Assembly (NCBI GenBank): GCA_964247055.1
Contig: OZ176051.1
Span: 12,028,001-12,092,000 of the forward strand
From: Paragordius varius
Lineage: Eukaryota > Animalia > Nematomorpha
Reading direction: 5' to 3'
DNA length: 64,000 bases
Within the stretch, counting starts at the first letter, position 1. The number at the start of each line of letters is the position of its first letter. The translations under genes and the position numbers were made by a program. Below the pieces are notes generated by a model that worked only from the letters and a program-made list of their open reading frames with translations, was not told the DNA's origin and did not search any database. Shown here piece after piece: positions 1 to 56,000 of the stretch.

Positions 1-450
1 TACGTGGAATCCATATTGAATTTTTACGGTCTCATACCTAGGGCGAAAAATCGATTCAAAAAATTATTTTTGTGAACTTTGTTTTTTGAAAAAGGTGGCA
101 TTTTACGGGGGGAGCGGGTAAAAAGAGCGCCTAAATCAAAAAAGTGGCTCGACTATGTTCAGCGCAATCGAAAATAAGTAAATAAAAATCATATTTGAAA
201 TTGAATGGTCCAACACGTTCTCCGAAAAATTGTCTCAAAGACACAATTTTTGTGGACTTCTGTTTTCAAAAAACCGTTTTTCATACGGGGTGGGCCCGAA
301 CTGGAAGCCTATTTCAAAAAAGGGCGAAGCTATTGTCGGGGCATTCATTAATGATTATATTTTTTCGAAGTTTGGATTTGATTGGGTCTACCGGTTTTCC
401 TGTACCAGATCACAAAGCCAGCATTTTCCATTTTTATAAATATATAGATT
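1..450 (+). repeat. Unclassified dispersed repeat (about 450 bp); inverted copy at 47223-47626
   Basis: The reverse complement of 47223-47626 matches along its length, e.g. GGGCCCGAACTGG and GATCACAAAGCCAGCATTTTCCATTTTTATAAATATATAGATT. The ORF track shows the same spurious peptide DHKASIFHFYKYID at both sites. Confidence 0.85.
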
Positions 451-539
451 CCTGATAACATCCACCCATTCTAAGCACATTTTGCTAATGTTGAAATCAT
501 GTAATTTCAGCAACCGTAACGGAACGTGGAATTTACGTG

Positions 540-2830
540 CTTATAATAATAGATTTAGTGGTTAACAAAATGACCAAGCAAGGACATACTAGGAATTATA
601 GTCCTTCTACCGGCACTTTAGAAATCGACATACCATATTGAATATAACTCTGGCCATAACTCGTTATAATTCAACGGTGTAGGTATAATAATGAATAAAA
701 AGCTGGCTAATTTATCTGACATTTTTATTCCAATCAATAAACATTAATTGCAATCCGCATACAACCCCTCATCTATCACAATCTTTCAAATTCACGCCCC
801 TACCTCCTTTTACAGCGAAGACGACTGTGGAAAATTTTAAAGTGATCTCGAAATGGCGATTTCCAAAATATTTATCTGAGAAAATTTAATTCGATCACAG
901 GAAAAGAAAAAAACACCTCCTATGACAGGCGGCATAGGCTTAGGCATAAAAAACGAGAGAGAAGATAGATTGATTGTGAATTCTGTGCAAACCATCGTTT
1001 CTTCGTCTCAAACACCTTTTTTAAACAACCTAAACGACGTCTATACACACGGCGTTCCCCGTGCAAAGATACCGTAACCAAATTGACTTTATATTAAGTA
1101 TGGTTAAATATAAAAGTTTTTCCATAAGTCAAATGCTTAGCAGGATTGAATTGCTACAGCGACCACAACCTATTAATCGCCAAAATCTGCTAAAGTTACA
1201 AATCCCCAAAATATCCAAACCCACCAGAACAAGATTAGATGATACAATCGACAACAAGTTTAGCACCGCTTATCTAATCGTTTCGATTGTCTTGATTATA
1301 ATTCCGAAAACTATCAGGATATAAACTCTTTGGAACGCTATAAATCTGCAGGGGTATAGCCGACAAATTTATACAGCCTCTCAAACTTACTAAACAAAAA
1401 AATAAAATTGTCAATCAAAAGTCTCGAGATCGCAGAAAAACGTAGAAAATCCAAAATCAAATGCAAATGGGGTGAATACAAACAACTAAACAGTGACTTT
1501 CAGAAATGTGCAAGAGAGGACAAAAATAATTATTACGACCAATTGTGCGAAAAAAACAGACGTCAAAAATAACCGAAACCTTTTTGTCCATACAAACGAT
1601 ATTATTCCACAAGAACTTTCTACAAGAGACCTATGAGAAACGACAACAACTCATCCTCACTGAAAAAGATGAAATCCGCAAACTCTTGCTTAAACATATA
1701 AGTAAACTATACAACGTAAATAACCCCCAGACTATTAACGGACTTACTCAAGAGAAAGACCCACCTATAATGAAAAAAGAAGTTAAACACGCTATAAATG
1801 ATTCTAGTATCGGCAAAGGAGCACAGAGAAATCCCTACTAAAATAATAAAATATATTACAATCAAAATACTTACCAAATTATTTCAAAATATACTTGAGA
1901 TGGAAAAATTTTTTGAAGATTGGTGTAACTGAATTATGATTCCTATTTATAGAGAAAAATGTAATTCATAATTGTGCGACAACTATCGCACCATAGCGCT
2001 CATTAACCAAGAGTTTAAAATATTCCTTAAAATAATACATCACTTAGGCTGGTTTTCGAATAGGTAGAGGATACAGAGATATGATATGCAAAGTGAGGTG
2101 ATACTAGATAAACATATGGAATACAAATAACGGCACATGTGCTTTGTTTCTACATAGCATTTGTTTCCATCCAACACAATAATTACGAACATCCCTAAAA
2201 CAACTTGGAATATTAACCCATTCAATCAAAGTCACATTCTTAATTTACTTAAATTCCACGGCTGTACACGGTATAACTGGCACATGTAAGGTGCAAGTCG
2301 GCCCACGCCAAAGCTGTGTTCTATCCTCTATTCTTTTTAACGCTTACCTCAAATCCATATTAAGAAACTCCCAGAAACTAATGTCATTAACGTAGTGGAA
2401 ATTTACTTACATACGTTCATTACGCGAATGAAACAGTCTTATTCGCCGACAGTGTAAACACATTAGAGGTTTTGCAAGTGTTTACAACTCAATAAATTTG
2501 GAAAATATAAAAAAAACAAAAGTTTTGCAAATCGACCCGGCTCAAAAGGAATTCAATATACCTCAACGGTGACACGTAATTGGGCAGCAATATAAACAAT
2601 GACAACAACTCTACTCCAGAAATAAAACAAAGAATTGCCCTTACAAAAGCAGTCACATTCAATAACAAGCAACCAATCATCAACCGAATTAAACGCCAGA
2701 TCCGGTATTGGCAATGAATGCAAAAGTTATATTTTCAATGTGGCAGGTAGTCGGAATCAACTTTAGCAACAACAAAAACAAAATAACTGCAAAATATTAA
2801 TGGAAATATCTTAATTTGGTAAAAAACTGA
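540..2830 (+). mobile_element. Decayed RTE-clade LINE (endonuclease and RT remnants) inside an ACLY intron
   Basis: Broken frames give RNQIDFIL (EN), EKDPPIMKKEVKHAI (linker), CDNYRTIALIN and PRQSCVLSSILFNAY (RT). These are collinear with the intact RTE at 16686. Many stops and frameshifts; ends approximate. Confidence 0.8.
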
Positions 2831-2869
2831 TAGAAAAGTATTAAACAGTCAAAAAGCAAAATCAATTAC

Positions 2870-5800
2870 CAATTTTAAAGCAGGCCGGCTTTATAGCACC
2901 CACGGTGGCTGGTCCAATTATTGTAATTTTATGATGAGGATGGTGATGTTTCCCAGCTTCATTTTTGTTTGAAACTTTTTCGGCATGCGCTATGAGAGAT
3001 TTCGTCAAATTTTCTGGAATACCTTCAGCTATGATTGCGATCGTACGAATCTTGACAAAATTATATATTTATATGATAACAAGGTATAAAATGCTATTTT
3101 ATATAAAAAATGAAAACACTAGTTAATTAAGCCTATCACAAGTTTTTCTCATCTAAAGTATGGATTTATGATTAATATTGGGAATATATAACAAAATGTT
3201 TGATTTCAGAGCATACAAAAATGCAAAATTAAATAATAATCACACATTTAGGGTTTAGGGGAGTGAATTATATGTGAATGAATTGGAATAAATTAATTTA
3301 ATTATTGCTAAAATCTTTTAAACCTGCAGTTTTATTTATAAACATCTATGGACGCCTTCTTTACTGATAATTTCAATCCGCGCAGATACATAATCTTATG
3401 TTTCGGGTGTATTCGTTTTCACTGACGCCCAATACAAGGCCCTGAATATATTCTTTCGACCTCTTCAAAATTTTATCTTCCTCAACGAGTAATTACCGTT
3501 GTTGTCATTAATAGCGGTCGCGTAAGGGGGTATGACCAACTTTTTTTATGTGTCCTTGTAATTAAAAACTTTATTTAAACCTTTCATATAGTGATTCCGT
3601 TCTCTCTTTTATAACCATTCTCACAAGCCTTTTGAGATCCTTATTATTCCTTTTATATTTTTCCCGCTCCTGGTTGTTATAATGGGTAAATATCCAGAAT
3701 TCAAAGGCTTGATTTTTTTACGATTTCATGTTTGGTCTTTCAGTCATGCCTCTTTATACACCTGATTTTTAACACCCTTCATTCTAAACACCCTAACTCC
3801 CGCCTCTCTAATTGTTTTAAACATAAAGACCTATCTCTTTCTGGATCGCTGTTCCTGTTTAGTATAACTACAGTTTCTACAAATCTTTCTTTACTGTTAT
3901 TGAAAAAATTCCATCACATTACCTTCGATGCTATAAGCTTTACGCTTTCAACAAATATTGGTATATCCGTTATATATTTGTGCATAATTATATGTTGTGA
4001 AACAAAAGACAAGAAAAAATATAGAATAATTGATATAAGGAACTCAAAAGACTAGTGAGATTGGTTAAAAAAAGAACACGAAATCACCTTGTGAAGAGAA
4101 TCAAAATAAAGTTTTTATATTTGCTCGACAAAGACACAGATGAAAGCTAAATTTTCTCCCTTACGCGACCGCTATTAAAGACAAAAACGGCAAATTACTC
4201 GTTGGAGAAGAGATTTTAAAGAGATGGAAATAATATTTCCAGGACAGTGAAACAAATTCACACGATATACCAGATTATGTATGTGCGCATATTTAAAGAA
4301 GTCGATATTGGTTTGAAAAAGATATTAATAAATAAAGCTGCAGTTCCAGACTTAAACATTAATTGTTGAAAAAAGTTAGAGAAAGGTATCAAATGTATAA
4401 CGATTATTTTTAATAATATATTATAAGTATTACTATCCGATTGTAAAAAGAGTTTCACTGTTACCATTTTTGGGTAAAGGAATTATAAATGATTGAAAAA
4501 TTACAGAATATAAGATTGATGTCCCATAATGAGATTAGAAAAACGGAAAAGAATGGTTTATATAGAGCAGGATTTACTGCAGTATTCGCAAAATATATGA
4601 GCTTTAACAAGTATTTAACTGATTTCGCAACAAAAGACTGTAACAACTACTATTTATTCAATCAATTTTACTTAGATCTCGTATAATTTTGTATCAAAAT
4701 TTGTCGCTAAAAATATTTTGCAGGTCCCGGTATGGAGAGTAATAAAAATTGGTTTTATTCCAGTAAAACACCGTCGATCCGATTCACGCAGTTAGAATGT
4801 TAATTGAAAAGCAGATAAAAATAAAAATAAAGTGTTTAATTTTGATTGGTAAAAAGCGTCTGCCATGATACCGCAAAGTATAATATAAAACGAAACAACG
4901 TGCCTGAAAGTTTCAAAAATATCCTCAAAAACATGTACGGCTCTAACCATATTATAAATAAAAGACATCAGGGAGTGTCAGATCATATCAAAATAAATTA
5001 AGGCGTCTATCAGGGGTCAGCAATCAGTCCGTTGCTTGAAATTATAAAAATTAACAATGTAATGGGTGGTATTTGCTGTACGCCGATGATGAAATAGTGT
5101 TGTGTCATGTGGCATGAATTGAAAAAAATTGTCATATGCTAATTAAATTTTGGTAAAAATGATGAATATATTGTGGAAGGGAGGAGGACAATAGCCCTAA
5201 AAACAAATGGATAGATACGGTTAAGATATGGCAAAGTTGAACTAAAATCGCAAGAAGAACGCCTTAGTCAAAGTTCAATGGGGAAATAGTTTTCAAATGT
5301 ATGACCGCTTGAAAGAATGATATCATATAATGTAGTTATTATATTAATTAAAATTATTTAAAGCATGAAAATCGATTACCAGTAATTTTTGTAAAGCGTA
5401 AGAAATAAAACTAAAATAAAATATGGTAATACTATTTAAATTGTTAAGTTCTTTAAGAATACCAAAAAAAGGCTTGGACGTTTGTATAAAAAAACATAAA
5501 GCAAATACCTATCGCACCTACTGTAAAGATAAAATATAACTAGGAGGCTGATATGTGGGTAATTGAGATAATAAAACAAGAGGGATATCAAAGGATAGCT
5601 TTTAGATTGAGAATAAATATACAGGAAAACGAAAAAATTAACAATCTAACAAATATGTTTTTTTAAATTAACAATATATTTTTATCATTCAAGAAAGTTT
5701 ACTAGTAGTATTCGGAAATTCATATTAATTTCAATTAATAAAATTTTAAATTTGGTTACAGAAATTTTTGATTACTTGGGGAAATTGCATACATTCCATA

Positions 5801-8800
5801 GTACTATCATAGGCGGATCGTAATGAAGCAAAATTTATCATAACATCGGCATCCCCATGCTTTTTCATAGCAACATCCATTTTGGCATATACTAATCAAA
5901 TGAAAACATAATAATTAATTGTTAAATTCAATTATATTTTCAAATCGTTAAATGCATATTAATTTGATAGGTTTTAATTTTTTGATCAAAAAAATAATAG
6001 TGCCTAATTCCGAATTTGTGTATGAAAGTTAATCAATTATGGTCGACGGTTGTGAAAATAATGAACGCGACTGATTTATCAAAATAACCCAAAAAGTTTT
6101 ATAGAGATGTTTATTTCGTGATTATATTTACCAATTAACAATGTAAAAAAAGTACCAATTTTTTATTAGTTTGTCATTTAAACACGATATAAACACTTTT
6201 AAAAGAAATTTATTGTAATTTTCGCTTATCAATTCTAATTCAATTTACTTTTTGCATTTAACCAGTTAATTATTATAATTATTATTATTTAGAGGTACAC
6301 CTTAGGCGTAGTAATTTCATTTCTAAAAATCCTTGTAAAAACCACTTATTATAAATTAAAATTCGTATTTTTAACATCTAATTATGCGAAATTAAAATTC
6401 GTAATTTTAACATTTGATTATGGGTAAACGCATAAATTATTTGATTATTTCTCAATGAATCAAATTATATAAAATATTTCCAAGATTCTATTACGAATGT
6501 AAATGACTGTAAACCTGGTATAAATATTTCCTTGTGACCCCAATAAAATTTAGCCTTGTGGTCTCCAGTAAAAGGATAAACCATAGCTGCCACCGAAGGC
6601 TGACTCCGAGCGCAGGAATAATCAAAATCTAACATACTTTGAACGGCTCGTAATTGCATACCCCAAATAATGGCACGCGTATTTTTCCTATAAAATTTTG
6701 GTAAATATATATGGAATTATCAAATTTTATAATTTGTTGCATAAAAAATCTAAGACTGAATTAGGTGTTAAAAACGGTTTATGAATCGCTTTTCAAAATA
6801 ACTAAACCAGTCAAGTCAAACGCTCCTCTAAATATATATTTATATAGTAATAATAATATATTGATACTTAAACTTAAATAAATTATGTCAAATATAGTAC
6901 TTTAATAAATAATCAATTTTAGTATAAATATGAATGATGCCCTAAATAATTATTTTAAAGTTTTGTTTAAACAAGTGACAATATATATATACATATGTAT
7001 CTGTAGGAAAAAGTATTTTTATGGTCGCAAATAACTGCAATCACGTTGAACTAGGTTAGGAAAGTTTTACACAAAACTACACATATTTTTTTAAAAAGTT
7101 ACTCTATTGATATCTATCGTGTAGGATATGTGTAAACTCGGAGGGAAAAATTTTGTTAAAGCATTCCAATTTCCTTTCCATATTAAAAGGTGTTAATGTA
7201 AAAATTTATATTGTAAATACACTTATAGTTATTAATAGAGAAAGTTAAAAATGTGGGTACTAATATTATATAGTCAACACCGGTTTTTCATGAAATATTA
7301 TCCATATAACACCATTCGATTTTTTTCCAAAAATATATATTAAAATAATTTTATTTAATTCTCTTTATATGGGGTTTGAAATATGCACAAACTACTAAGT
7401 GTATGTAAAATTAAACTCGAACGATTTTGCTCTAAAACCAATTGGATATCGCAAAAGTGTATGATGTAGCATAATCTAATACAAGTCGCTGTTTGTTAGT
7501 TTTAAAAATTGTCCTTAAAATAAGTGAAAATCTCCTGTTTATTTACATATATAATCATCAAATAAGCATGACATACATATAAATTCTAAACCTAAGATTA
7601 AAAAAAATTACGTGAAAAGAAGATAATCTTGGACTGTGTTTATTGATGTGACTTTATTTGAAGAATGCTTATCAGCCTTTTTAACATCATCATCATGCAT
7701 GGTGGATTGAAGGGAATCGCCTTTAGATGGCCAATCCATATCAATACCATTCGGCAAATTATTTTTTGTTGCAATGTTTGGGTCTGTCTGACTTTTTACA
7801 CCAAGCTGCTGTTTATTTGGGGTGTGAGAACTACTGGCAGTCGAAGAAGTCCCATGTGATATACTTTTCTATGCGCAATTATTAGTTTAATATCAAAAGG
7901 CATTTAAAAGACATTATATATATATAAACTTTTTGCGCGCTTTTTTATGGCAGACCTATATATCTAGGTTTTTTTTGAAAAAATGTCTTGTTTAATCCTT
8001 TTATCTGCTACTATTTATTTTTCAGCACACAAACAATTAAAAAAATGATTTTCAAAATTTTGCCATTTTTTTCATATAATAAAAAAAAGAATATACTGCA
8101 AATTTTCTGCAGTCTCATGTTTTAACAGAAAAAAATGTTTGAAAGCATAAAATGTTAACCATTCCGCTCGAGAGTAAGAAATTGGCTGTAGTTTCCGAAG
8201 GCACGGGTTCAGGAGCAATATCAGTTTTACCAAGCGCCATCCCCACGATAGCTGTCATGTGTGTTTCAGGTCCATACACGTAAATGGGAACACCGGATAA
8301 AGTTTTGCCTAAAAAGCCAAATAAGGGTATAAACATTATATTTTTAAGAAAATAAATCGGTTGGGTGTAATGAAATATAAATTAACAGTCCATAAGGTTA
8401 AAGTAATTAAAAAATTGAAACAACACATATATATATATATATATATTAGTTAGTAATGATGCTTTCTTTAGGTTAAATTAATCAAAAAATTATTTTGCCT
8501 AAAACTATATATTACAAAATATGGATGTTTGATGAATAATGGATATAATTATTTAAATAGATATATATATATATATATGCATAAACATCAGCTTTCATAC
8601 AAAATGGTAAGAACCATCAATTATTCATGTGTTAAATAAAATGGGATATCGTACGAACATGCACATAATAATTTCAAAAATATAATCTATAATAATCGCA
8701 CAAAATAGAATAATAGCTAGTTTATGTTAATAAAGAGCTTTAATACCCAAATTTTTCATGATTCTCAAGCCCTCTTGATAATTGGGTCCAGCACGGCGCA

Positions 8801-16216: not shown

Positions 16217-19200
16217 AAACCATGTGATTGAAAGCGGGAGGATATTCAAGGATAGTATTTTTTATTATATACTATAAATATATTTAAAAAATAGGTTTCC
16301 TTTTAGTAATTATTAATCTTTTTCTTTGTTTTGTAGAGTTTTTAATTTATTTGTATGCTAAGTATGTAATTTAAAGAGTAACATAATTCTTAAGTCATCA
16401 AAAATCATTGTTATACAGATCTCTCTCTTTTTTTTTCTCTACTCCTTGGTGCCTAATTATTTTATTTTTACTAGCCTAGCCATAATTTCTTTATATTTTT
16501 CCTTTATGATTGCCAGAGAGAGCAAAATATCAATATTTATAATTTATCCAAATTAACAACATTTATAAAGATTACTCCTTAATTTTAATTATTCTAGATA
16601 TTTATTTTTTGTAAAGAGGGTAAGTGAGAGGGAAGGCAATGGCAAACCACCCTCGTTTATTACTGCCAAAAAATAGTTTTACTAAATGAACTTAACAAGA
16701 ATTTTCAAAGTTGGATGCTGGAATGTACGTTCCTTAACATCAACCAAACAAGTGATAATTGAAAAGGAAATGGAAAGATTGAACATAGATATACTGGGTC
16801 TAACGGAAACCAAGCAAAAAGGTAGCGCGAAAGTACAAAACGGAAATTATACATTGTTAAGATCGGGGAGAGATGACCAGAAATCTGAAGGCGTTGCAGT
16901 ATTAATAAAAAACAAATTAAATAAAAGTCTCATTAGTTATACACCATATACACCCAGAATCATGAGTATTAGGCTGAATGCCAAGCCACTTAAATTTACA
17001 TACATAGTAGTCTATGCTCCTACGTCAAACGCTCCCAAAGAAGACATAGAGGACTTTTATGCAACGTTGCAAATAGTTTTGGATGAAACGAAGAAAGGAG
17101 ATATGATTATCATAGGAGGGGATTGGAACAGCAAAGTTGGTAGAGGTAGAGTAGATCAAATAGTCGGGCCATATGGATTGGGAGAACGAAACGAGGCCGG
17201 GGAAGCACTGATCAATTTTTGTCAAGAAAATGAGATGATGATAACCAACACATGGTTTCCACAACACAATAGGAGGTTATACACATGGACCTCTCCATGT
17301 GGTAAATATAAGAATCAAATTGATTACATAATGTGCCCTCAAAAATGGAAAAGCTCTATAATTGATACCAAAACAAGCAAAAGCAGCGATTGCTCTAGCG
17401 ATCATGAGCTTTTAATAACCAAAATCAAACTTAAAATAATTAAAAATAAGGTTAAACAGATATACAGATATGACACTCGGAACATTCCAAATAGTTTTAG
17501 AACAGAAACCAAAGATAGATTAGAAAGATTGGACAATGGATGTAGCTCAGAACAATTATGGGGAACGATAAAAAATGTTGTTAATGAAGTGGCAAAAGAA
17601 AAAGTGCAGAGAGTAAAGAGGAAAGATAACAAATGGATATCAGAAAAGAGTATAGAGATAGCAGAAAAGAGGAGAAAAGCTAAATCAAGAGGTGATAATA
17701 AAATGGTAAAATTATATAACAAAGAATTTCAACGACAAACAAGGAAGGATTACGAAGATTTTCTTAATAAACAATGTCTGGAAGTGGAATTAAATAACAA
17801 AAAAGGATTAATGCAACCAATGTTCCAGAAACTGAAGCAAATGACTCATAAACCTTTTATATCATCACAAAAGATTAAAAAAGAGAATGGCACCATATTG
17901 TGCAAACAAACAGAAGTACGAGAAAGATGGAAGGAATACACCCAAAAACTCTATCAGGCTCCTCAAACAAAGGTGTTGCAATTAAAAGAAGAAGAACGTG
18001 ATCCAGATATATTAAGAGAGGAGGTTGAATTAGCCTTAAAACAAATTCCTAACAACAAAGCGACGGGATTAGACAATATCCCAATAGAGTTCATAAAAGC
18101 TATTCCCGTTGAAAAGTTACACCAGCTATGTCAAAAGGTGTGGGAAACATGTGAGTGGCCAAACGATTGGGCATCATCTGTATATCTCCCAATATATAAA
18201 AAAGGAGGTGTACTCCAATGCGAGAATTATCGGAACATATCTCTTATTAGCCACGCTAGTAAGGTCTTACTAAAAGTAATACAAAACAGAATGCACAGTA
18301 TCATACAGACAGAAATACCAGAAAATCAAGCTGGATTTATGAAGGGAAAAAGCACAAGAGACCATATCTCAAACATGAGAAGGATAATGGAAACATCAAA
18401 AGAGTTCCAGAAAGAATTATACATGTGTTTTATTGATTACAGACAAGCATTCGATTCAATTAACTATGACTCCTTGTGGGAAACATTAAAGTTAGTAGGG
18501 GTATCGTCTCACTTAATAAGATTGATTAGATCTCTGTATGTAAAACAAAGAGCGATTATTAGAACACCAGCGGGGGACACAGACGAAATACCAATCTTGA
18601 AAGGAGTCAGACAAGGGTGTTGCTTATCCCCTTATCTGTTCAATATGTGCACAGAAATGATAATGAGGAAGTTGGATGGTAAAAATATAGGAGTAAGAAT
18701 AGGAGGGAGAACAATCAATAATTTAAGGTTTGCAGACGATACCACTCTTATAGCTGAAAGTGCAAATGATTTGAAGGAATTGATTGAAGAGATTCGAAAG
18801 GAAAGTTTGAGGTATGGTCTTAGGCTTAATCCTAACAAAACCAAAATATTATGTACAGGAAAAAAGCCTACAATTATAATAGAAGGAGTAGAAATAGAAA
18901 TAGTTAAACAGTTAACGTTTTTGGGCGCAATAATTTCAGAGGATGGGTCTTCAACTCCTGACATCAGAAAGAGAATAGGATTGGGTAGAGAAGCGATGAC
19001 CAAATTAATAAAGATTTGGAAAAACAAAAGCGTAGGAGTTGAAACCAAAAAAAGATTACTCTACTGTTTCGTTCTCCCGGTCACCACATATGGATGTGAG
19101 AGTTGGACCCTCAAAAAAAGGGACAAAGAAAGGCTCATGGCTTTTGAAAGGAGCTGCTGGCGTAGGATGCTAGGATACACCTGGAAGGATAAAATTAAGA

Positions 19201-19502
19201 ATGAAAGTCTAACTACAGAAATAAAACCTAAAACAAACATCATGGAGATAATTCTAAAAAGAAAGTTAACATATTTTGGTCATGTCATGCGATCGAATTC
19301 TCTGGAGAAAGATACAATGTTTGGGAAGGTAGAAGGGCAAAGGAAACGAGGCCGACCACCGATGAGGTGGTTGGATATGATAAAAGAAGAGACCAAAATG
19401 ACACTGAAAGAGCTCAATATAGCGGTTAAAGATAGAAAAAAATGGAAAGAAATAGTTAAAACTATATCCAAGTCGTTTACGACTTAGGAAAAACCAACCA
19501 CC
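16217..19502 (+). mobile_element. Apparently full-length RTE-clade non-LTR retrotransposon (3286 bp) with a 12-bp TSD
   Basis: Perfect TSD ATTGCAAAATAT at 16205-16216 and 19503-19514. One intact ORF, a very short 3' UTR and a short AACC/ACC repeat tail. Confidence 0.95.
16686..19487 (+). CDS. RTE LINE ORF: APE endonuclease plus reverse transcriptase (933 aa)
   Basis: EN motifs GCWNVRSL, GLTETK, GGDWNSKVG, NQIDYI, SDH. RT motifs QAGFMKGKST, FIDYRQAFDSI, GVRQGCCLSP, LRFADD. RTE C-terminal motifs YFGHVMR and RGRPPMRWLD. Confidence 0.97.
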   Translation: MNLTRIFKVGCWNVRSLTSTKQVIIEKEMERLNIDILGLTETKQKGSAKVQNGNYTLLRSGRDDQKSEGVAVLIKNKLNKSLISYTPYTPRIMSIRLNAKPLKFTYIVVYAPTSNAPKEDIEDFYATLQIVLDETKKGDMIIIGGDWNSKVGRGRVDQIVGPYGLGERNEAGEALINFCQENEMMITNTWFPQHNRRLYTWTSPCGKYKNQIDYIMCPQKWKSSIIDTKTSKSSDCSSDHELLITKIKLKIIKNKVKQIYRYDTRNIPNSFRTETKDRLERLDNGCSSEQLWGTIKNVVNEVAKEKVQRVKRKDNKWISEKSIEIAEKRRKAKSRGDNKMVKLYNKEFQRQTRKDYEDFLNKQCLEVELNNKKGLMQPMFQKLKQMTHKPFISSQKIKKENGTILCKQTEVRERWKEYTQKLYQAPQTKVLQLKEEERDPDILREEVELALKQIPNNKATGLDNIPIEFIKAIPVEKLHQLCQKVWETCEWPNDWASSVYLPIYKKGGVLQCENYRNISLISHASKVLLKVIQNRMHSIIQTEIPENQAGFMKGKSTRDHISNMRRIMETSKEFQKELYMCFIDYRQAFDSINYDSLWETLKLVGVSSHLIRLIRSLYVKQRAIIRTPAGDTDEIPILKGVRQGCCLSPYLFNMCTEMIMRKLDGKNIGVRIGGRTINNLRFADDTTLIAESANDLKELIEEIRKESLRYGLRLNPNKTKILCTGKKPTIIIEGVEIEIVKQLTFLGAIISEDGSSTPDIRKRIGLGREAMTKLIKIWKNKSVGVETKKRLLYCFVLPVTTYGCESWTLKKRDKERLMAFERSCWRRMLGYTWKDKIKNESLTTEIKPKTNIMEIILKRKLTYFGHVMRSNSLEKDTMFGKVEGQRKRGRPPMRWLDMIKEETKMTLKELNIAVKDRKKWKEIVKTISKSFTT

Positions 19503-43905: not shown

Positions 43906-45334
43906 TTATAAGGTAGCCAATATCAATAATAAATTAGTATCGGGAAAAACTATTAAACGGAATTTCGTTAGGTTATGTATCTATAAATCCCATTTTTAGC
44001 TCTTTCCCGTATCTAAAAAATGGCGTTAATTTAAAAAGTTTATATAAGCTCTAATAATCATAATTTGGCTGGTATATTTTAAACTGTAACAATTTAATAT
44101 AATATTTTAGGTCCAATACACGGCTTTAATATCGATTTCAAATTAATTAACTATATTTAACATGGGAATAAAAGCAAAAGTTTTACCATAATTTAATCAA
44201 TTTATATTTTACATCTGATTAATATATTAACCCAAAAAACGTTTTTTGTACAAATCTAAATTTATATTGACAGATATTATAATAAGTTTACAGATATCAG
44301 CGTTTTACTACATATTTTTAAAAATTAGAACGATACTGATAATCGGCTGTTTGAAGCATTCACCAAAATTTTTGGAGATTAAACACCTTATTCTATATTA
44401 TACGAATCCTTCCAAAAAATAAAAATAACCCTCAAATATGGCATATTTCAAAAAAGATTTTTTGTAATTTTAATTATATTAAATTAATAACAATTACACA
44501 ACTATAAGCTAAAAAATTTATAAAATTATATAATTTTAATTTTATGGGGATAAAACGGTTTAAATAAAAAACCTCCAGTGCTCTCACAAAAACTTTGCAA
44601 ATCATGTGTCTCAATAACTTTTGTAGTTGTATCTTTGAGGGTTGATTTTACCATTTTTGTCATAATAGTGTTAGATAAGTTTCCAGAATATGCGATGTAA
44701 AGGGTGAAAAATTTATGGTCCCATCTATATGGTAATGACCATAGTTCGGTACCCAATAAGCGATCTTTTGATGCCGAATTTAAATTAAATATATTGATTA
44801 ACTATTGTATATTAATATTATAAAGCAAACCTTTTCGGTGAAATTTGACTCTTTTTGAAGATAACAACCGTTTGTTATAAATATACATACACAGTATTCC
44901 GTATAAAATGGTGAACGCCCCTAAAAATATTACTGATTATTTACTTGTCCAAAAGTATCAATTCCAGACATAAATCGGTTAATATTTAGTAAGTCAAATG
45001 TTTGAATGACCGCATTAGGGACTTTGGTAGATAAAGAATTCGCTTTAACAAACTTTAACTCATGCATAAAAGTTATATGATTTTCTCTCCAGCCAGCCTA
45101 TACATTTTAGAAAATAGTAACTTTTATATTATGTGGATATTCATCCAAAGTTAGCAACATATATCTATCTATACGTGCATTAGGTTCTTTGGCTCGCAAC
45201 TATATTTTAAAATTAAGCACAACTTTTATAAATGATTCTATAAAATTTTTAGCGACATCTAAATAACTAATTCCTAAATATGTCTTTTGTTGCATCGAAA
45301 AATTGTTATCAACCAAAAAGACGATAATAGTCAT
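33690..45334 (-). CDS. INTS6: Integrator complex subunit 6, spliced. First exons 45334-45224, 45199-45122, 45097-44945, 44920-44831, 44801-about 44565. Further exons near 42990-42630, 42350-42063, 41250-41090, 40920-40740, 40300-40217, 39815-39695, 38736-38567, 37670-37121, 36937-36766, 36380-36250, 36060-35790, 35310-35183, 34610-33963, 33855-33690. Some internal boundaries and the 3' end are unresolved
   Basis: VWA N-terminus MTIIVFLVDNNFSM; AGWRENHITFMHELK; FDLLNINRFMSGIDTFGQGRSPFY; GTELWSLPYRWDHKFF; WPLPESF; PIDRYEIEPS; GLSYPLISYLKK; SIAQMGNFQEY; PRLHTFGNPFK. These match INTS6 in order. The exons below about 35300 are assigned by phase only. Confidence 0.92.
36482..36718. mobile_element. 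TATA-flanked MITE (ends CCATTTACAGTTCAAATTCACCC) in an INTS6 intron
   Basis: Terminal inverted repeats and internal sequence shared with the other copies. Confidence 0.75.
38170..38488. mobile_element. TATA-flanked MITE in an INTS6 intron
   Basis: CCATTTACAGTTCAAATTCACC...GGGTGAATTTGAA...TAATGG|TA with 21-bp subterminal repeats. Confidence 0.8.
38936..39248. mobile_element. TATA-flanked MITE in an INTS6 intron
   Basis: Ends CCATTTCAC... and ...TTGTAAATGG|TATA; several AATTTGAATTGTTCAAGGGT repeats. Confidence 0.8.
39405..39561. repeat. Foldback element (about 157 bp imperfect palindrome) in an INTS6 intron
   Basis: ATGGTTGCTTATTTCACA...GGGCAATT...GTATGGAAAAA is mirrored by its reverse complement ending TGTGAAATAAGCAACCAT. 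Confidence 0.8.
40327..40617. mobile_element. TATA-flanked MITE in an INTS6 intron
   Basis: TATA|CCATTAACAGTTCAAATTCAC...GTGAATTTGAATTGTAAATGG|TATA. Confidence 0.85.
41412..41703. mobile_element. TATA-flanked MITE in an INTS6 intron
   Basis: Same ends and internal sequence as the other copies. Confidence 0.8.
43460..43705. mobile_element. TATA-flanked MITE in an INTS6 intron
   Basis: Right end TTTGAATTGTAAATGG|TATA intact; left end degenerate. Confidence 0.75.
43855..43902. repeat. (AT)n microsatellite, the longest of many in the window
   Basis: An uninterrupted AT dinucleotide run of about 45 bp. Confidence 0.9.
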
Positions 45335-50759: not shown

Positions 50760-51780
50760 CTTTAGACTTTCAGGCTACATTGTACCACAAAATAAACTGC
50801 GTCAGATTAACAATAGGCAACACAGCTTTCGTTCCAAACGAGTCTGGGATTCATCAAAGATCTATCTTAAGCCCTTTTCTTTTTATATTAATTATTTATC
50901 TAACAAAAGATATAAAAGGTCGACTATGGGAGTTTATCTATGCTTACATCATGATCGCGGCAACATCAATTGAGAATTTAAATCAAAAGTACAACATATG
51001 AAAATTTTAAAATAGTGAAACGGCGATAAACAAAGCAAAACACATGTGCAAATAACGGATAAAACGGTATGTGAACGAGTTAGTTTATATATGGAGTAAA
51101 ATAAAACTTTACTCAATACTATGTACATCTTCAAGGGTGGTATACAAAAAGTGCTTTCTTATAAAAGGGACTTTAAACAACCAGGATAAATTTCTATGTG
51201 AATCATGCAAAAATAAAACTGTAAATCCACATACTTCTCTAAATACACTTATATGTCAGACGCCAAAATGATTCATTAATAATTTTGAATACCCGGGCGA
51301 TGTTATACATTTCCGAGGTAGAATAAGCCAGATAGTTCAATAAAGATCCCATTAGGCTTGGGTAAATTATCATCAATCTAAAATAGCGCTGAAAAATAAA
51401 CATATATCTGGAAAAAACAAAGGCCTGATCTAAAAACAACCATACGCCCCATACTCCTCTATGGAAGCGATACATGGCCGATGACATATTAAATCGAGAA
51501 TTAACTGATGGACATAAAAAGCGGATGATTTAACTATTTAACCCCAATAGGTCAAACTCAAATTTGGATCAACTCTACTAACCTTTAAATATGCTCAGAT
51601 GTAATAGACTCAGATGTTTAGGACACATCAAACTAGCTCCAGAACAATGGACATATAAAATTTTATTTCCACATCCCGAAGGTATCAATCGTATGAGCAG
51701 ACCTACTTTAAACTGGGAAGTTGCCAACATTGATGTAATGCCTGGAAGGATCGCAAATGTTACAGGCAGATAGGGATACA
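50760..51780 (+). mobile_element. Decayed RTE LINE, RT to 3' end
   Basis: ORF track peptides GIHQRSILSPFLFILI (GxxQG motif region) and LRCLGHI...EGINRMSRPTLNW (RTE C-terminus). Confidence 0.75.
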
Positions 51781-51861
51781 ATGACTAGCCATCCCACACG
51801 ATACCTCCTAAGATGAAACATTTTTTAATAACCTTGCAAGTAAAAAATTTATTAAAATAAA

Positions 51862-52626
51862 TTATATAACATTTGGCATATCTTCGATTCCAATCTCCTC
51901 CTAAATACAAACGTAAAAAATATTTTAAAACCAATAATTGATTTTTTGGATGTGGATAATTTTCAAGTATTGTATCCAAAATATCCATTAGCTAAATTTA
52001 ACCAATAATTTATACCATTCTACGTCTAATTTTATATTCTTTGGTCAAAAGGGCATTTAAATCTAATATCTTGCTTTAGATTAGAAATGTAATTACCATT
52101 TTTTTCTCGTTTTCTGGTATAAGGTTTTGATTTGTTTTAATATGAGTTAAAGTTTCTTGCAAATAATTTTTCTGAATTTAAAATTGTATTATACTTCTTT
52201 AGATGTTTCATCAAGTAAAAGTTTAGCTTCAGCAAGAGTCAAAGTAGCTCGTAAACTTTGTAATTCTTTAATATCAAAAGGTAATACTTTCATCCATAGC
52301 TTTGATATCCTTCTTGACATCAAAATTATTTTCTTTTAACTCATCAATCTTATGGTCCATTTCTCGCATTTCATCCTGGTCTAAAATTGGCAGTTTATCC
52401 TAAACATATTACATAATAATAAAACTTGATCAGGCAGGTATACTTTTTGTTTTCCATAAATTTTTTCAACAATTAACTTTTTGGCAACAAGATTATCAAG
52501 TGCCTTAATTATTGCAGTTTTTCCATAGTCTTTCTGCAAGTGATTACTAATATCTTGAGCACTATATGGCCGATTGTGGTTTTCCAAAAATTGGTATACA
52601 GCGTCGTCTGCTGTGGATCTACTCAT
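51862..52626 (-). CDS. PSMC3IP: Homologous-pairing protein 2, complete, 203 aa. Exons 52626-52426, 52399-52288, 52265-52195, 52171-52097, 52069-52016, 51991-51932, 51900-51862
   Basis: Winged-helix N-terminus FLENHNRPYSAQDI...KIYGKQKVY, coiled coil, and C-terminal KEYKIRRRM-LMDILDTILENYPHPKNQLL-EEIGIE matching HOP2. The spliced CDS is 612 nt with no internal stop. Confidence 0.95.
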
Positions 52627-53056
52627 GCTTATTAAACAGCTGAATTTGTTTTAAACAACTAAATTCATATTTTTATAAATTAAATTATTTATTATATATT
52701 TTTTCTATTTTAACTGTTTCACAAATGATTTTGTTGGATTCACAGATATGTGGTTAGATAAATTGTTTTTATCATCAGATTTAAATCTAATTTTTTGCCC
52801 TTAAGCTAATTTGGGTGTGTTTACTTAAACATTTATTTGATTATCGCTTAAATAAATTAATGATATGAGTCACCACCTGGATTTATAATGTTAGCAATAT
52901 TCCTACGTTGTGACTATCCATATATAAACCTTACTTTATTATCATCATTGGAAATGGGCGTTTATTCTTTTAAAATTTATCAAGCAACCATGCTTTCAAA
53001 TCGTGCATTTGATTAACTAAATAACCCACGACGCCCTGATCTATATCAAATACAAT
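52627..53056. promoter_or_regulatory. Probable bidirectional promoter between HOP2 and the MEGF10-like gene
   Basis: The two start codons diverge and are only 430 bp apart. No specific motif was identified; positional inference only. Confidence 0.5.
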
Positions 53057-56000
53057 ATGGCATTTAATTCACTGGTTTTATTATTATGGTGCATAATTAT
53101 ATTCCTACAAAATATTCCACCATCAATTTATGCTGCCAATTCTATATACGATTTATCTTCTGCCAAACCTCGTAATACAGAAAGCTTGACTACATTTTCG
53201 CAACGTCGGTCAGTCTCTTTACTAACAAGTAATCAAACCAGTCTATTAGAGCTTGAAAATGGCCCGAACGTTTGCACCAAATCTACTATGTAAAGTTCAT
53301 TTAAATTTGATATATTATTTATTTTATACCTTTATATGTAGTGTTCTCCTAATGTACACAAAATATTTGGGTGTTGAGGATTAGCGTTTTAAAATTATTA
53401 ACGTTTATATCAGGGGACTCTAACACCCGACCTCCAAGTCATTATATAAGGCCTCGATTGTGAATCCATAATTTCCAAAAATATTCTTAAATCTTAGTTA
53501 AATTGATACTTCTGAGACAATTTTTATTAAAGTATAATTGGCGACGAACTGACTCTAACGTTAATTCCATGAGATATTTATTTATATCAAACTTTTTTAA
53601 TCAATGCCCTGTGAATTGATTGGAGTTTTTGCAGATTTAAACTATCAACCTAGATTATGGTCTCACCCCTGATACTGATTTCGATTTTTATGCATGCCTA
53701 TATATATATATCAGTGGTACTCACCAAAAAAATTTGACGGGCCAAATAAAACATATTTTTTTTTCGAGGGCCATGAACCTTATAATGGCAAATATTCCAT
53801 AGCTATTTGACACATACGCACATATTTATACTCTAAATCAGCACAATAAATTTTTTGCGGGTCGCATGTAAATCCAGATAAAAATTCGTTTTGAACCATT
53901 TAGTTTTAAAAATTAAAATATATTGATAACAACATTTATTTTAATATTAATCAATAATTTTTGACAATATTGGTTTCGCCTCATGGCAGGCCATTCTTAA
54001 TACGTCGTCCATATGATCATTAGTTAAGCGATTTCTGTAAGTATTCTTAACATACTTCATTTTTGAATATGCCGTCTCACACGTGTAAGTTGATGGAAAA
54101 ATAGTTAAGATAACTTGAGCACATTTTTTTATATTTTCATATTTATTTGGCACAACTTGCCAAAACTCTATATATCTTTCTTCTCTACGGTTTTCCTTAA
54201 ATATAGCTTCCAAATTGGAATCATTTTTAAAATCAACGAATTCATCAATGATAACCGCCTGATCAAAACCAAAAAGCTCAAGTTGCTTAATGTTGGATAT
54301 ATCCATATGCCATGGATTTTCCACTAGCTTTAAGCAATTTTTTATATTTTTTAATTCTTGAAATCTGAATTTCATCTCATTAGATAAAATGTTAAATGAT
54401 TGTCTATTATTAAATTAATATCCGCGGTAAATTGCATATTTTCTTTATGAATCGTTTTAAGTGTTGGAAAATGTAGGAGTGTTTTATCTATAAAATCTTG
54501 TTTATATATTATTAATTTTTCTTCAAAAGCAAATATATGATTAGCAAATTGGGTTATTATTTTGCTCCCTTAAAGACTTGTATTAAAAGTACTAAGTTTA
54601 TAAATAATGTCGCAAAGGTAGGTTAATAAAATTCACCATTTGTCACTATTAATTTCCTCGTCAAACTTTCTGTTATCTTTTATAAATAATAGAATTTCAT
54701 GTCTTAAATCAAAAAATCTATTCAATACTTTGCTAAGGCTTGGCCATCTCACAGCGGTGTACAAAAGAATATCATCAAACTCACTATGGATATCTTTCAG
54801 AAGGTTTTTGAATTTAATGTGATTGAATTCTCTGCCACGGATGTAGTTAACTATATCCACAACCGTTTTAATTACTAAATTTAGTGATTCATCGTTTACA
54901 CGCGAAATCAAGTTTTGCTCATGAATGAAGCAGTGAAAGGATAATAGATTTTGCAAATTATATTTGTTTTTTAAAAGAGAAATAAACCCTTTGTTTATTC
55001 CAATCATAGAGGGACAGCCATCTTTGCAGATCGAAACCAATTTTTTCATAGATATACCATTATTATCGAAAAAGGTGCTAATTACTTCAAGAAAATCACT
55101 GCCTTTTGTGGTATTATTCATTGGTAAAAATTTCAAATATTCCTCGTTGATTATGTTGTCGTTGCAAAATCTCACGAAGAGCGCACATTGAGGTGTTGAA
55201 CTTATATCAGTGCTAGAATCGATTGCAATACTGAAGTATTTGTAATTTTTCAGAGCCAATAATGTATTGTTAAAAATATATTTAGACATATCTTCAATGC
55301 GTCGAGCACATGTTGAATCAGAAAGTTGAAGTTTTTTAATTTGCCTCATGATTTGTTCTTTATTATGGAATTTATCAAATAAAAAAGTGCAACCATTTAT
55401 TAAACATTCTTTAATTAGTTGGGAATCAGTAAACGGTTTCATATTTTTTCCTAAAATATAGCAAATTTCATACGAAGCTAATGTTACAGCTTTCTCCTAG
55501 GAAAAAGCTATGGCCATAATAGATTTTTCTTTCTCGTATAATTCCTTAAAATTTTTATATTTTTCATTTCTTTCCTCAAGATTTTCTGGTAATTTATGAG
55601 AATGATGGATTTTAAAATGTCTTTCAATATTGTATTTTTTTATAATTATATTGTCCTTGCATATAAGGCAGGTAGCAACATTGTTATTTAAAACGACAAA
55701 AAAACCAGTTTCCCATTCTTTTTTAAAGGAGCGATTTTCATCGGATAATTTACGTTTTTTGGCATTAGATGTCATCCTTTGAATTTATGTTTAAATATTA
55801 TGTAAAAAAAAGAGGAATATAAATTGAATTATGCTATAAAAAACAGGTCGAAATTTAATGATATTGAGTTGAAAATATTTTATGAGAATGAGTTTTAAAA
55901 ATGATGCAGGATAGCGATGAAATGTATGTGCAATCGGTGAAAACAAAAAAGAAATGCAATAAAAATTTCAAAAAGAAAAGAAGAAGAAACAACGTGTGCC

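What the first reader, a model, noticed from the sequence alone, without database searches (positions are those of the whole stretch)
51862..52626. HOP2 gene in which all six introns are only 22-31 nt
Seen directly: GT-AG segments at 52400-52425 (26 nt), 52266-52287 (22), 52172-52194 (23), 52070-52096 (27), 51992-52015 (24) and 51901-51931 (31). Each introduces a stop or frameshift unless removed. Removing all six gives a clean 203-aa HOP2 collinear with the recalled human protein. The internal exons are 112, 71+75, 54 and 60 nt; from memory human PSMC3IP has exons of 112, 146, 54 and 60 nt (to be checked). That would mean five ancestral introns shrank and one extra microintron splits the 146-nt exon. 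Established: most animal introns are longer than about 40-60 nt, and introns this short are known mainly from ciliates, nucleomorphs and dicyemids. Inference: this animal's spliceosome handles introns near the known minimum size.
Basis: partly seen in the sequence, partly recalled or inferred. Interest (0 to 1): 0.92.

Follow-up and report, generated by a model that had tools for sequence, protein, structure and literature searches.

The report
HOP2 gene with six tiny introns
An intact meiosis gene (HOP2) in what is almost certainly a horsehair-worm genome is interrupted by six introns of only 22-31 bases, each at a position where other animals have much longer introns; this supports a third animal group with introns under 30 bases, though no RNA was available to show the splicing.

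Summary
On the minus strand at 51862-52626, removing six GT-AG segments of 26, 22, 23, 27, 24 and 31 nt joins seven exons into a stop-free 203-aa protein. It is a HOP2/PSMC3IP orthologue. Exon 1 matches the Pfam TBPIP/Hop2 winged helix (1.3e-23), and homologues fetched with exon 1 alone align over residues 1-197. In a tree it pairs with the horsehair worm Gordionus at 100/100 support.

All six introns share position and phase with Gordionus introns (39, 40, 132, 37, 43 and 1646 nt there). Five are shared with an alligator and five with a clam. Eight of ten exonic variants between individuals are synonymous in the spliced frame.

Two N-terminal introns are missing here.

No RNA run held this gene, so splicing is inferred. 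A stop-free path alone proves nothing here, since decoy splice pairs give as many.

Introns under 30 nt are published for dicyemids and myxobolids. I found no such report for horsehair worms. The scan had already noted such micro-introns elsewhere in this genome, so this is one more clean instance.

The parts
51862..52626 (-). HOP2/PSMC3IP gene, from the ATG to the TAA stop (765 nt genomic, 612 nt CDS, 203 aa)
52426..52626 (-). Exon 1 (201 nt), the winged-helix DNA-binding domain. It is a fused exon: two introns present in relatives are absent here.
   Evidence: Pfam PF07106 at 1.3e-23; mouse Hop2 structure 2mh2 at 2e-15; intron table
52400..52425 (-). Intron 1, 26 nt, GT-AG, phase 0
   Evidence: Same position and phase as Gordionus (39 nt) and Alligator (811 nt). 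The variant at -3 leaves the AG intact.
52288..52399 (-). Exon 2 (112 nt)
   Evidence: Same length as in Gordionus and Alligator
52266..52287 (-). Intron 2, 22 nt, GT-AG, phase 1
   Evidence: Same position and phase in Gordionus (40 nt), the clam (1000 nt) and Alligator (185 nt)
52195..52265 (-). Exon 3 (71 nt)
   Evidence: Same length in Gordionus and the clam
52172..52194 (-). Intron 3, 23 nt, GT-AG, phase 0. This is the intron that splits the vertebrate 146-nt exon.
   Evidence: Shared with Gordionus (132 nt) and the clam (367 nt), absent in Alligator
52097..52171 (-). Exon 4 (75 nt)
   Evidence: Same length in Gordionus and the clam
52070..52096 (-). Intron 4, 27 nt, GT-AG, phase 0, with an in-frame TAA
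   Evidence: Shared with Gordionus (37 nt), the clam (2471 nt) and Alligator (821 nt). Two C>T variants inside it.
52016..52069 (-). Exon 5 (54 nt)
   Evidence: Same length in Gordionus, the clam and Alligator
51992..52015 (-). Intron 5, 24 nt, GT-AG, phase 0, with an in-frame TAA as its second codon
   Evidence: Shared with Gordionus (43 nt), the clam (6152 nt) and Alligator (1337 nt)
51932..51991 (-). Exon 6 (60 nt), part of the LZ3/capping-helix region
   Evidence: Same length in Gordionus, the clam and Alligator. Weak PF18517 match on this piece alone, E=0.03.
51901..51931 (-). Intron 6, 31 nt, GT-AG, phase 0
   Evidence: Shared with Gordionus (1646 nt), the clam (3946 nt) and Alligator (198 nt)
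51862..51900 (-). Exon 7 (39 nt including the TAA stop)
   Evidence: The C-terminus is short, as in Gordionus.
51848..51853 (-). AATAAA hexamer 9-14 nt after the stop codon, a possible poly(A) signal. This is weak evidence in AT-rich DNA.
   Evidence: Read from the sequence
52651..52653 (-). In-frame TAA nine codons upstream of the ATG. It bounds the ORF and supports 52626 as the start.
   Evidence: Read from the sequence. The N-terminus MSRS... aligns with MSK... of homologues.

Best explanation
This is the functional HOP2 (PSMC3IP/TBPIP) gene of a nematomorph, a horsehair worm related to Gordionus but distant from it. HOP2 is the meiotic recombination cofactor that works with MND1. The coding sequence is interrupted by six ordinary U2-type GT-AG spliceosomal introns. 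All six were inherited from the bilaterian ancestor and have shrunk to 22-31 nt. Each must be removed exactly to restore the frame. They are most likely recognised by intron definition from a minimal 5' signal (GTA or GTT), a 3' (T/A/C)AG, and an A-rich patch 6-8 nt before the AG that would act as the branch site. The anatomy, homology, conserved positions, presence in genomic DNA and purifying selection are shown here. The act of splicing and the signals used are inferred.
For: Anatomy and reading frame. Winged-helix domain matches. Homologues retrieved with exon 1 alone align collinearly over residues 1-197, at E values from 1e-47 to 1e-26. The tree pairs the window protein with Gordionus HOP2 at 100/100 support. 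Exact exon mapping shows all six introns at the same codon and phase as in Gordionus, five shared with Alligator and five with the clam, and internal exon lengths 112, 71, 75, 54 and 60 identical to Gordionus. Genomic contigs from several runs and at least two samples carry the segments unchanged, with no indels in the gene. Of ten exonic variants, eight are synonymous singly, or nine if the two changes in codon 43 are read together. Eight lie at third codon positions of the spliced frame. The two wrong frames give 3 and 0 synonymous of 10. The binomial P is 5e-5 against all possible changes and 4e-3 against transitions only. None of the four intronic variants touches a GT or AG. In the same window, INTS6 pieces align to human INTS6 residues 1-37, 38-63 and 64-113 without gap or overlap across two 24-nt GT-AG segments, so the feature is not peculiar to HOP2. 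Introns are 19% GC against 30% for exons.
Against: There is no transcript evidence. The RNA-labelled runs of the same species label hold none of the gene's sampled words. The four runs I laid look like DNA and show no spliced joint. No protein matching the spliced product turned up in a search of the public protein collection with the Gordionus orthologue. The ORF criterion alone is not diagnostic. The kind of runs X2-X5 is not on record. If any were RNA, it would show intron retention, but the even depth across intergenic DNA argues that they are DNA. The branch-site reading rests on ten introns in 81% AT sequence and is not significant.
Confidence: 0.86

Rival explanations
1. The introns are real, but the model is wrong in detail. 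One or more boundaries may differ, for example the alternative AG four bases upstream in intron 4. Or the true start may lie in an unseen upstream exon, with the apparent ATG region following an acceptor at 'CCACAG'.
For: Gordionus and the clam have a phase-1 intron after 22-25 nt of CDS. The aligned site in the window reads ...TCCACAG|CA, which resembles an acceptor. No RNA was available to fix the boundaries.
Against: The internal exon lengths equal those of Gordionus exactly (112, 71, 75, 54, 60), which fixes introns 2-5 and the inner ends of introns 1 and 6. The alternative AG in intron 4 would shift the frame. The N-terminus MSRS aligns with the conserved MSK start, and an in-frame TAA lies nine codons upstream.
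Confidence: 0.07
2. This is a dead or dying HOP2 copy. The short segments would be insertions or retained relics that are never removed, so no protein is made.
For: No transcript evidence for this gene. A contig in X4 and X5 appears to join 51868 to 52670 and so skips the gene, which hints that it might be dispensable.
Against: Frame-specific excess of synonymous variants across exons 1-5 and 7. Every segment has GT-AG ends and lies exactly at an ancestral intron position and phase. There are no stops or indels in any exon. The skipping joint has only 21 letters on its shorter side, in AT-rich low-complexity sequence.
Confidence: 0.04
3. Assembly or sequencing artefact: the short segments are not in the animal's DNA.
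For: None found.
Against: Run X1 holds 99-100% of the sampled words. Contigs of X2, X3, X4 and X5 span the segments with only point differences. X4 record 23 covers 51858-52883, and X2 record 5 covers 51927-52433.
Confidence: 0.01
4. The segments are removed at the DNA level, by programmed elimination in somatic or germline nuclei as with ciliate internal eliminated sequences, and not by RNA splicing.
For: The size range overlaps that of the shortest ciliate eliminated sequences (general knowledge). This cannot be excluded without RNA and tissue-specific DNA.
Against: The GT-AG ends, and positions and phases identical to spliceosomal introns of three other animals, are what inherited introns predict. 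No DNA contig lacking single segments was seen in four runs.
Confidence: 0.01

Closest known systems
HOP2 gene of Gordionus sp. m RMFG-2023 (Nematomorpha; XP_065312511, locus L001)
   Same: Nearest relative, at 51% identity and 100/100 tree support. The six intron positions and phases are identical, as are the internal exon lengths 112, 71, 75, 54 and 60. Both have a shortened C-terminus, and both lack the phase-0 intron that the clam and Alligator have in the winged helix.
   Different: The Gordionus introns are 39, 40, 132, 37, 43 and 1646 nt, against 26, 22, 23, 27, 24 and 31 nt here. Gordionus also keeps a 42-nt phase-1 intron after 22 nt of CDS, which this gene has lost. In this one gene the short-intron size is about 40 nt in Gordionus and about 25 nt here.
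Ultra-short introns of myxobolid myxozoans (Henneguya, Thelohanellus, Myxobolus) and of Dicyema japonicum
   Same: GT-AG introns with medians of 22-27 bp at conserved positions. The 5' signal is reduced to 'GTa', there is little beyond AG at the 3' end, and a few weakly conserved A residues lie upstream of the AG (PMC13644364). Dicyema has a mean intron size of 38 bp (PMC6736024). The ten introns examined here begin GTA (5) or GTT (5), and A is commonest at -6 to -8.
   Different: A different phylum (Ecdysozoa: Nematomorpha). This genome is not compact around the gene: an intact-looking LINE and hAT transposon remains lie within the same 64 kb. Earlier notes of this scan report ordinary long introns beside the micro-introns. 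Splicing here is not yet shown by RNA, whereas Iso-Seq reads support it in Henneguya.
Vertebrate PSMC3IP/HOP2 (mouse winged helix 2mh2; Alligator gene structure as vertebrate proxy)
   Same: The same protein architecture, with a winged helix followed by coiled coils. Five of the six intron positions are shared, and exons of 112, 54 and 60 nt are identical.
   Different: Alligator has a single 146-nt exon where this gene has 71+75 nt. It has two extra introns in the N-terminal part, its introns are 77-1337 nt, and its acidic C-terminal tail is longer.
Ciliate micro-introns (Paramecium about 25 nt; Stentor 15-16 nt)
   Same: Spliceosomal GT-AG introns in the same or a smaller size range. They show that a canonical spliceosome can process such lengths (PMC13644364 cites Stentor; the rest is general knowledge).
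   Different: These are unicellular eukaryotes in which nearly all introns are tiny. Here the gene is animal and the intron positions are ancestral bilaterian ones.

Membership tests
HOP2 / PSMC3IP / TBPIP protein family | N-terminal TBPIP/Hop2 winged-helix DNA-binding domain (PF07106) | tested here: met
   Exon 1 scores 83.1 bits, E=1.3e-23, covering profile positions 2-60 of 62. It matches the mouse Hop2 winged-helix structure 2mh2 at E=2.2e-15.
HOP2 / PSMC3IP / TBPIP protein family | Coiled-coil or leucine-zipper region ending in the LZ3 capping helix (PF18517), with a total length of about 200-220 aa | tested here: met
   The spliced 203-aa product aligns over residues 1-197 with full-length homologues that carry PF07106 and PF18517. 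The 20-aa exon-6 piece alone gives only E=0.03 to PF18517. The whole spliced protein could not be handed to the Pfam tool by reference.
HOP2 / PSMC3IP / TBPIP protein family | Orthology: groups with HOP2 of related animals | tested here: met
   Sister to Gordionus HOP2 with 100/100 support in a 16-taxon maximum-likelihood tree.
HOP2 / PSMC3IP / TBPIP protein family | Forms a heterodimer with MND1 and stimulates DMC1/RAD51 strand invasion | not testable with these tools
   No MND1 gene was looked for outside the window. This is a biochemical property.
Ultra-short (<30 nt) spliceosomal introns of animals | Canonical GT-AG boundaries and a length under about 30 nt | tested here: met
   All six are GT-AG. 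Five are 22-27 nt and one is 31 nt.
Ultra-short (<30 nt) spliceosomal introns of animals | They occupy conserved intron positions between conserved exons | tested here: met
   Six of six positions and phases are shared with Gordionus, five with Alligator and five with the clam.
Ultra-short (<30 nt) spliceosomal introns of animals | Precise removal seen in transcripts | not testable with these tools
   The RNA-labelled runs of this species label hold 0.00 of the gene's words.
Ultra-short (<30 nt) spliceosomal introns of animals | A class feature of the genome, not of a single gene | tested here: inconclusive
   Two 24-nt introns of INTS6 in the same window are supported by gap-free collinearity with human INTS6 residues 1-113. 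A window-wide census by ORF chaining could not tell real introns from decoys. Earlier scan notes report many more, but I did not test them.

The most novel reading that the evidence does not exclude
Horsehair worms, or at least this lineage, are a third independent animal lineage with spliceosomal introns under 30 nt. The same six HOP2 introns are about 40 nt or longer in Gordionus, so the shrinkage would have happened inside the phylum. It would have happened in a transposon-rich genome that is not compact, which argues against simple genome streamlining as the cause. Standard gene finders and BUSCO-type tools do not expect such introns. Part of the published 'rampant loss of universal metazoan genes' in Nematomorpha could therefore be missed genes and not lost ones.
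Probability: 0.55. Interest if true: 0.72.

Novelty: new member of a known kind. Interest (0 to 1): 0.55.

Why it matters
Introns under 30 nt were long held to be absent from animals. A 2026 survey of 51 metazoan genomes found them only in myxobolid cnidarians and in Dicyema (PMC13644364). Its main text does not mention nematomorphs, and its species list was not available to me.

This HOP2 gene is a clean, self-contained test case for three reasons. It has six such introns in 765 nt. Every one is anchored to an ancestral intron position. A related genus has the same introns at about 40 nt or longer, which gives a within-phylum contrast for asking how and why introns shrink.

There is also a practical consequence. 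Annotation pipelines with default minimum intron lengths would break genes like this one. That bears on the low BUSCO scores and gene-loss claims for this phylum. This last point is my inference and was not tested.

Tried and rejected
1. I ran a window-wide census of micro-introns by dynamic programming, chaining stop-free segments through any 18-35 nt GT..AG. Decoy boundary pairs (TG..GA, GA..TG, AG..GT, GT..GA, TG..AG) gave as many or more chains. The real run even extended the HOP2 chain with nine spurious 'introns'. I rejected this as evidence.

2. I sought RNA evidence. Two run searches and one laying of X2-X5 found only genomic-looking contigs that keep the segments, with no spliced joints. 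The RNA-labelled runs of the species hold none of the gene.

3. I searched the public protein collection with the Gordionus orthologue, looking for a match to the spliced product. No other nematomorph protein was found. The 81-aa read-through ORF of exon 1 is not on record either. An exact look-up of the 203-aa product was left out because the spliced protein has no reference and long sequences must not be typed.

4. Pfam on short exon pieces of HOP2 and INTS6 was too weak beyond exon 1. It was replaced by full-length alignment and by PDB matches. INTS6 piece 4 found nothing.

5. Rfam on the whole window, looking for snRNA genes or other RNAs, found nothing.

6. Literature searches for intron sizes in nematomorph genomes found no statement. 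The Current Biology paper on the first nematomorph genomes is not held.

7. I considered and rejected a ciliate origin. The CDS uses the standard code with no in-frame TAA or TAG, and the protein nests inside animal HOP2 next to Gordionus.

Full report
**What is there.** On the minus strand, an ATG at 52626 opens a gene that ends with TAA at 51862-51864. Removing them joins exons of 201, 112, 71, 75, 54, 60 and 39 nt into a 612-nt stop-free CDS of 203 aa. Unspliced, all three frames are broken. Four segments shift the frame, and the 27- and 24-nt ones carry in-frame TAA codons. The window is 24-35% GC throughout. The introns are 19% GC and the exons 30%.

**Is it more than chance?** The open reading frame alone is not. 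I chained stop-free stretches through any 18-35 nt GT..AG segment across the window and compared the result with five decoy boundary pairs. GT-AG gave 47 chains with at least two 'introns', and the decoys gave 44-73. The optimiser also added nine spurious 'introns' around HOP2. In DNA this AT-rich, a clean ORF after removing short GT-AG pieces is cheap. The case rests on the independent evidence below.

**Identity.**
- Exon 1 alone matches the Pfam TBPIP/Hop2 winged helix at 1.3e-23 and the mouse Hop2 winged-helix structure 2mh2 at 2e-15.
- An exhaustive HMMER search with exon 1 alone returned 368 relatives.
- These were found without using exons 2-7, yet the full-length ones align with the spliced product over residues 1-197. 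The clam Ruditapes gives E=1e-47 at 40% identity.
- The nearest relative is HOP2 of the horsehair worm Gordionus sp. m RMFG-2023, at 71% identity in exon 1 and 51% overall.
- In a 16-taxon maximum-likelihood tree the two are sisters with 100/100 support.
- Both share a shortened C-terminus.
- Gordionus has 26.9% GC (bioRxiv 10.1101/2023.06.26.546503), similar to this window.

The window therefore comes from a nematomorph, though one distant from Gordionus (path length 1.27 substitutions per site). Earlier notes of this scan reached the same identification from other genes.

**Intron positions.** I fetched the genomic loci of four orthologues and mapped each protein exactly onto its DNA.

| Species | Exon lengths (nt) | Intron lengths (nt) |
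|---|---|---|
| This window | 201, 112, 71, 75, 54, 60, 39 | 26, 22, 23, 27, 24, 31 |
| Gordionus | 22, 185, 112, 71, 75, 54, 60, 45 | 42, 39, 40, 132, 37, 43, 1646 |
| Ruditapes (clam) | 25, 95, 105, 97, 71, 75, 54, 60, 54 | 344-6152 |
| Alligator | 34, 107, 132, 112, 146, 54, 60, 57 | 77-1337 |
| Orchesella (springtail) | 150, 228, 258 | 94, 105 (neither position shared with this gene) |

Placed on one protein alignment, all six window introns share column and phase with Gordionus introns. Five are shared with Alligator and five with the clam. Positions predicted from this sequence alone coincide to the nucleotide with introns of three other animals. That is the strongest argument that they are real introns.

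- The recalled vertebrate pattern of 112, 146, 54 and 60 nt holds in Alligator. Human was not checked.
- The intron that splits the 146-nt exon (71|75) is not an addition in this animal. Gordionus (132 nt) and the clam (367 nt) have it at the same phase-0 site.
- This gene has lost two introns of the winged-helix region. One is a phase-1 intron after about 22 nt, present in Gordionus and the clam. The other is a phase-0 intron present in the clam and Alligator, and Gordionus also lacks it.

**DNA, not artefact, and under selection.**
- Run X1 holds 99-100% of the sampled words.
- Contigs of X2-X5 span the segments. X4 record 23 covers 51858-52883.
- Depth in these runs is even across genic and intergenic DNA. 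I therefore read them as DNA, although their kind is not on record.
- They differ from the window at 14 positions inside the gene.
- Ten of these are exonic. Eight are synonymous singly, and nine if the two changes in codon 43, which lie on one contig, are read together (CTT to TTA, Leu to Leu). Eight fall on third codon positions of the spliced frame.
- In the two wrong frames only 3 and 0 of the 10 would be synonymous.
- The binomial P is 5e-5 against all possible changes and 4e-3 against transitions only.
- The synonymous variants lie in exons 1, 3, 4, 5 and 7, whose genomic frames differ. A single protein read across them requires removal of the segments.
- The four intronic variants spare GT and AG, and no indel occurs in the gene.

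**What is missing.** There is no transcript. The RNA-labelled runs under the same species label hold none of the gene's words, and the laid runs show no spliced joint. A search of the public protein collection with the Gordionus orthologue found no match to the spliced product. Splicing is therefore inferred. I could not test that.

**Not only HOP2.** In the same window, three consecutive INTS6 pieces align to human INTS6 residues 1-37, 38-63 and 64-113 with no gap or overlap. This supports 24-nt GT-AG introns at 45200-45223 and 45098-45121.

The ten micro-introns examined begin GTA (5) or GTT (5) and end mostly TAG. A is the commonest base at -6 to -8. This resembles what is described for myxobolids and Dicyema (PMC13644364), but it is not significant at this sample size.

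**Context and novelty.**
- Sub-30-nt introns in animals are published for Dicyema and myxobolids. The 2026 survey states these are the only two lineages known (PMC13644364).
- Its main text does not mention nematomorphs, and its supplement is not held.
- Papers on nematomorph genomes in the library say nothing about introns.
- The gene lies among transposons. A 933-aa endonuclease plus reverse-transcriptase ORF is at 16686-19487, and hAT transposase remains are at 53947-55775. Compaction of the whole genome is therefore not the setting.
- The scan had already flagged micro-introns in this genome several times on other DNA.

I file this as a new member of a known kind. The gene itself is ordinary. 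The intron size class in this phylum is the interesting part, and this locus is one of its cleanest illustrations because of the Gordionus contrast of about 40 nt or more against about 25 nt.

Noticed in passing
window 45098-45121 and 45200-45223 (minus strand): INTS6 begins at about 45334. Its first three coding pieces align to human INTS6 residues 1-37, 38-63 and 64-113 with no gap or overlap, which supports two 24-nt GT-AG micro-introns. Two further candidates (44921-44944, 24 nt; 44802-44830, 29 nt) were not confirmed, because piece 4 found no match.
   Followed up: partly
window 51868 to 52670: In runs X4 and X5 (one sample) a contig joins 51868 to 52670 and skips 801 nt, almost exactly the HOP2 gene. 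Its depth is about 0.4 of the main contig. Only 21 letters lie on the shorter side and the flanks are AT-rich low-complexity sequence. It may be a spurious match or a deletion allele.
   Followed up: partly
window 51602-51703: About 160 nt beyond the 3' end of HOP2, word depth in the DNA runs jumps from hundreds to as much as 100,000. This marks a very high-copy short repeat, either a MITE or a satellite-like element.
   Followed up: no
window 16686-19487 (+): An uninterrupted 933-aa ORF with an Exo_endo_phos endonuclease domain (1.9e-12) and an RVT_1 reverse transcriptase domain (6e-40). It looks like an intact non-LTR (LINE) retrotransposon.
   Followed up: partly
window 53947-55775 (minus strand): Three ORFs next to HOP2 carry a hAT dimerisation domain (7e-9), DUF4371 (2e-4, below the curated cut-off) and a Spin-doc-type zinc finger (1.6e-5, below the curated cut-off). 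These look like remains of a hAT-family transposase, possibly also split by short introns or frameshifts.
   Followed up: partly
L001 (Gordionus HOP2 locus) 3001-5606: Five of the seven Gordionus HOP2 introns are 37-43 nt. That is already near the lower edge for animals, but clearly longer than the 22-31 nt at the same sites here.
   Followed up: yes
whole window: No Rfam family reaches its gathering score anywhere in the 64 kb: no tRNA-like, snRNA or rRNA match.
   Followed up: yes
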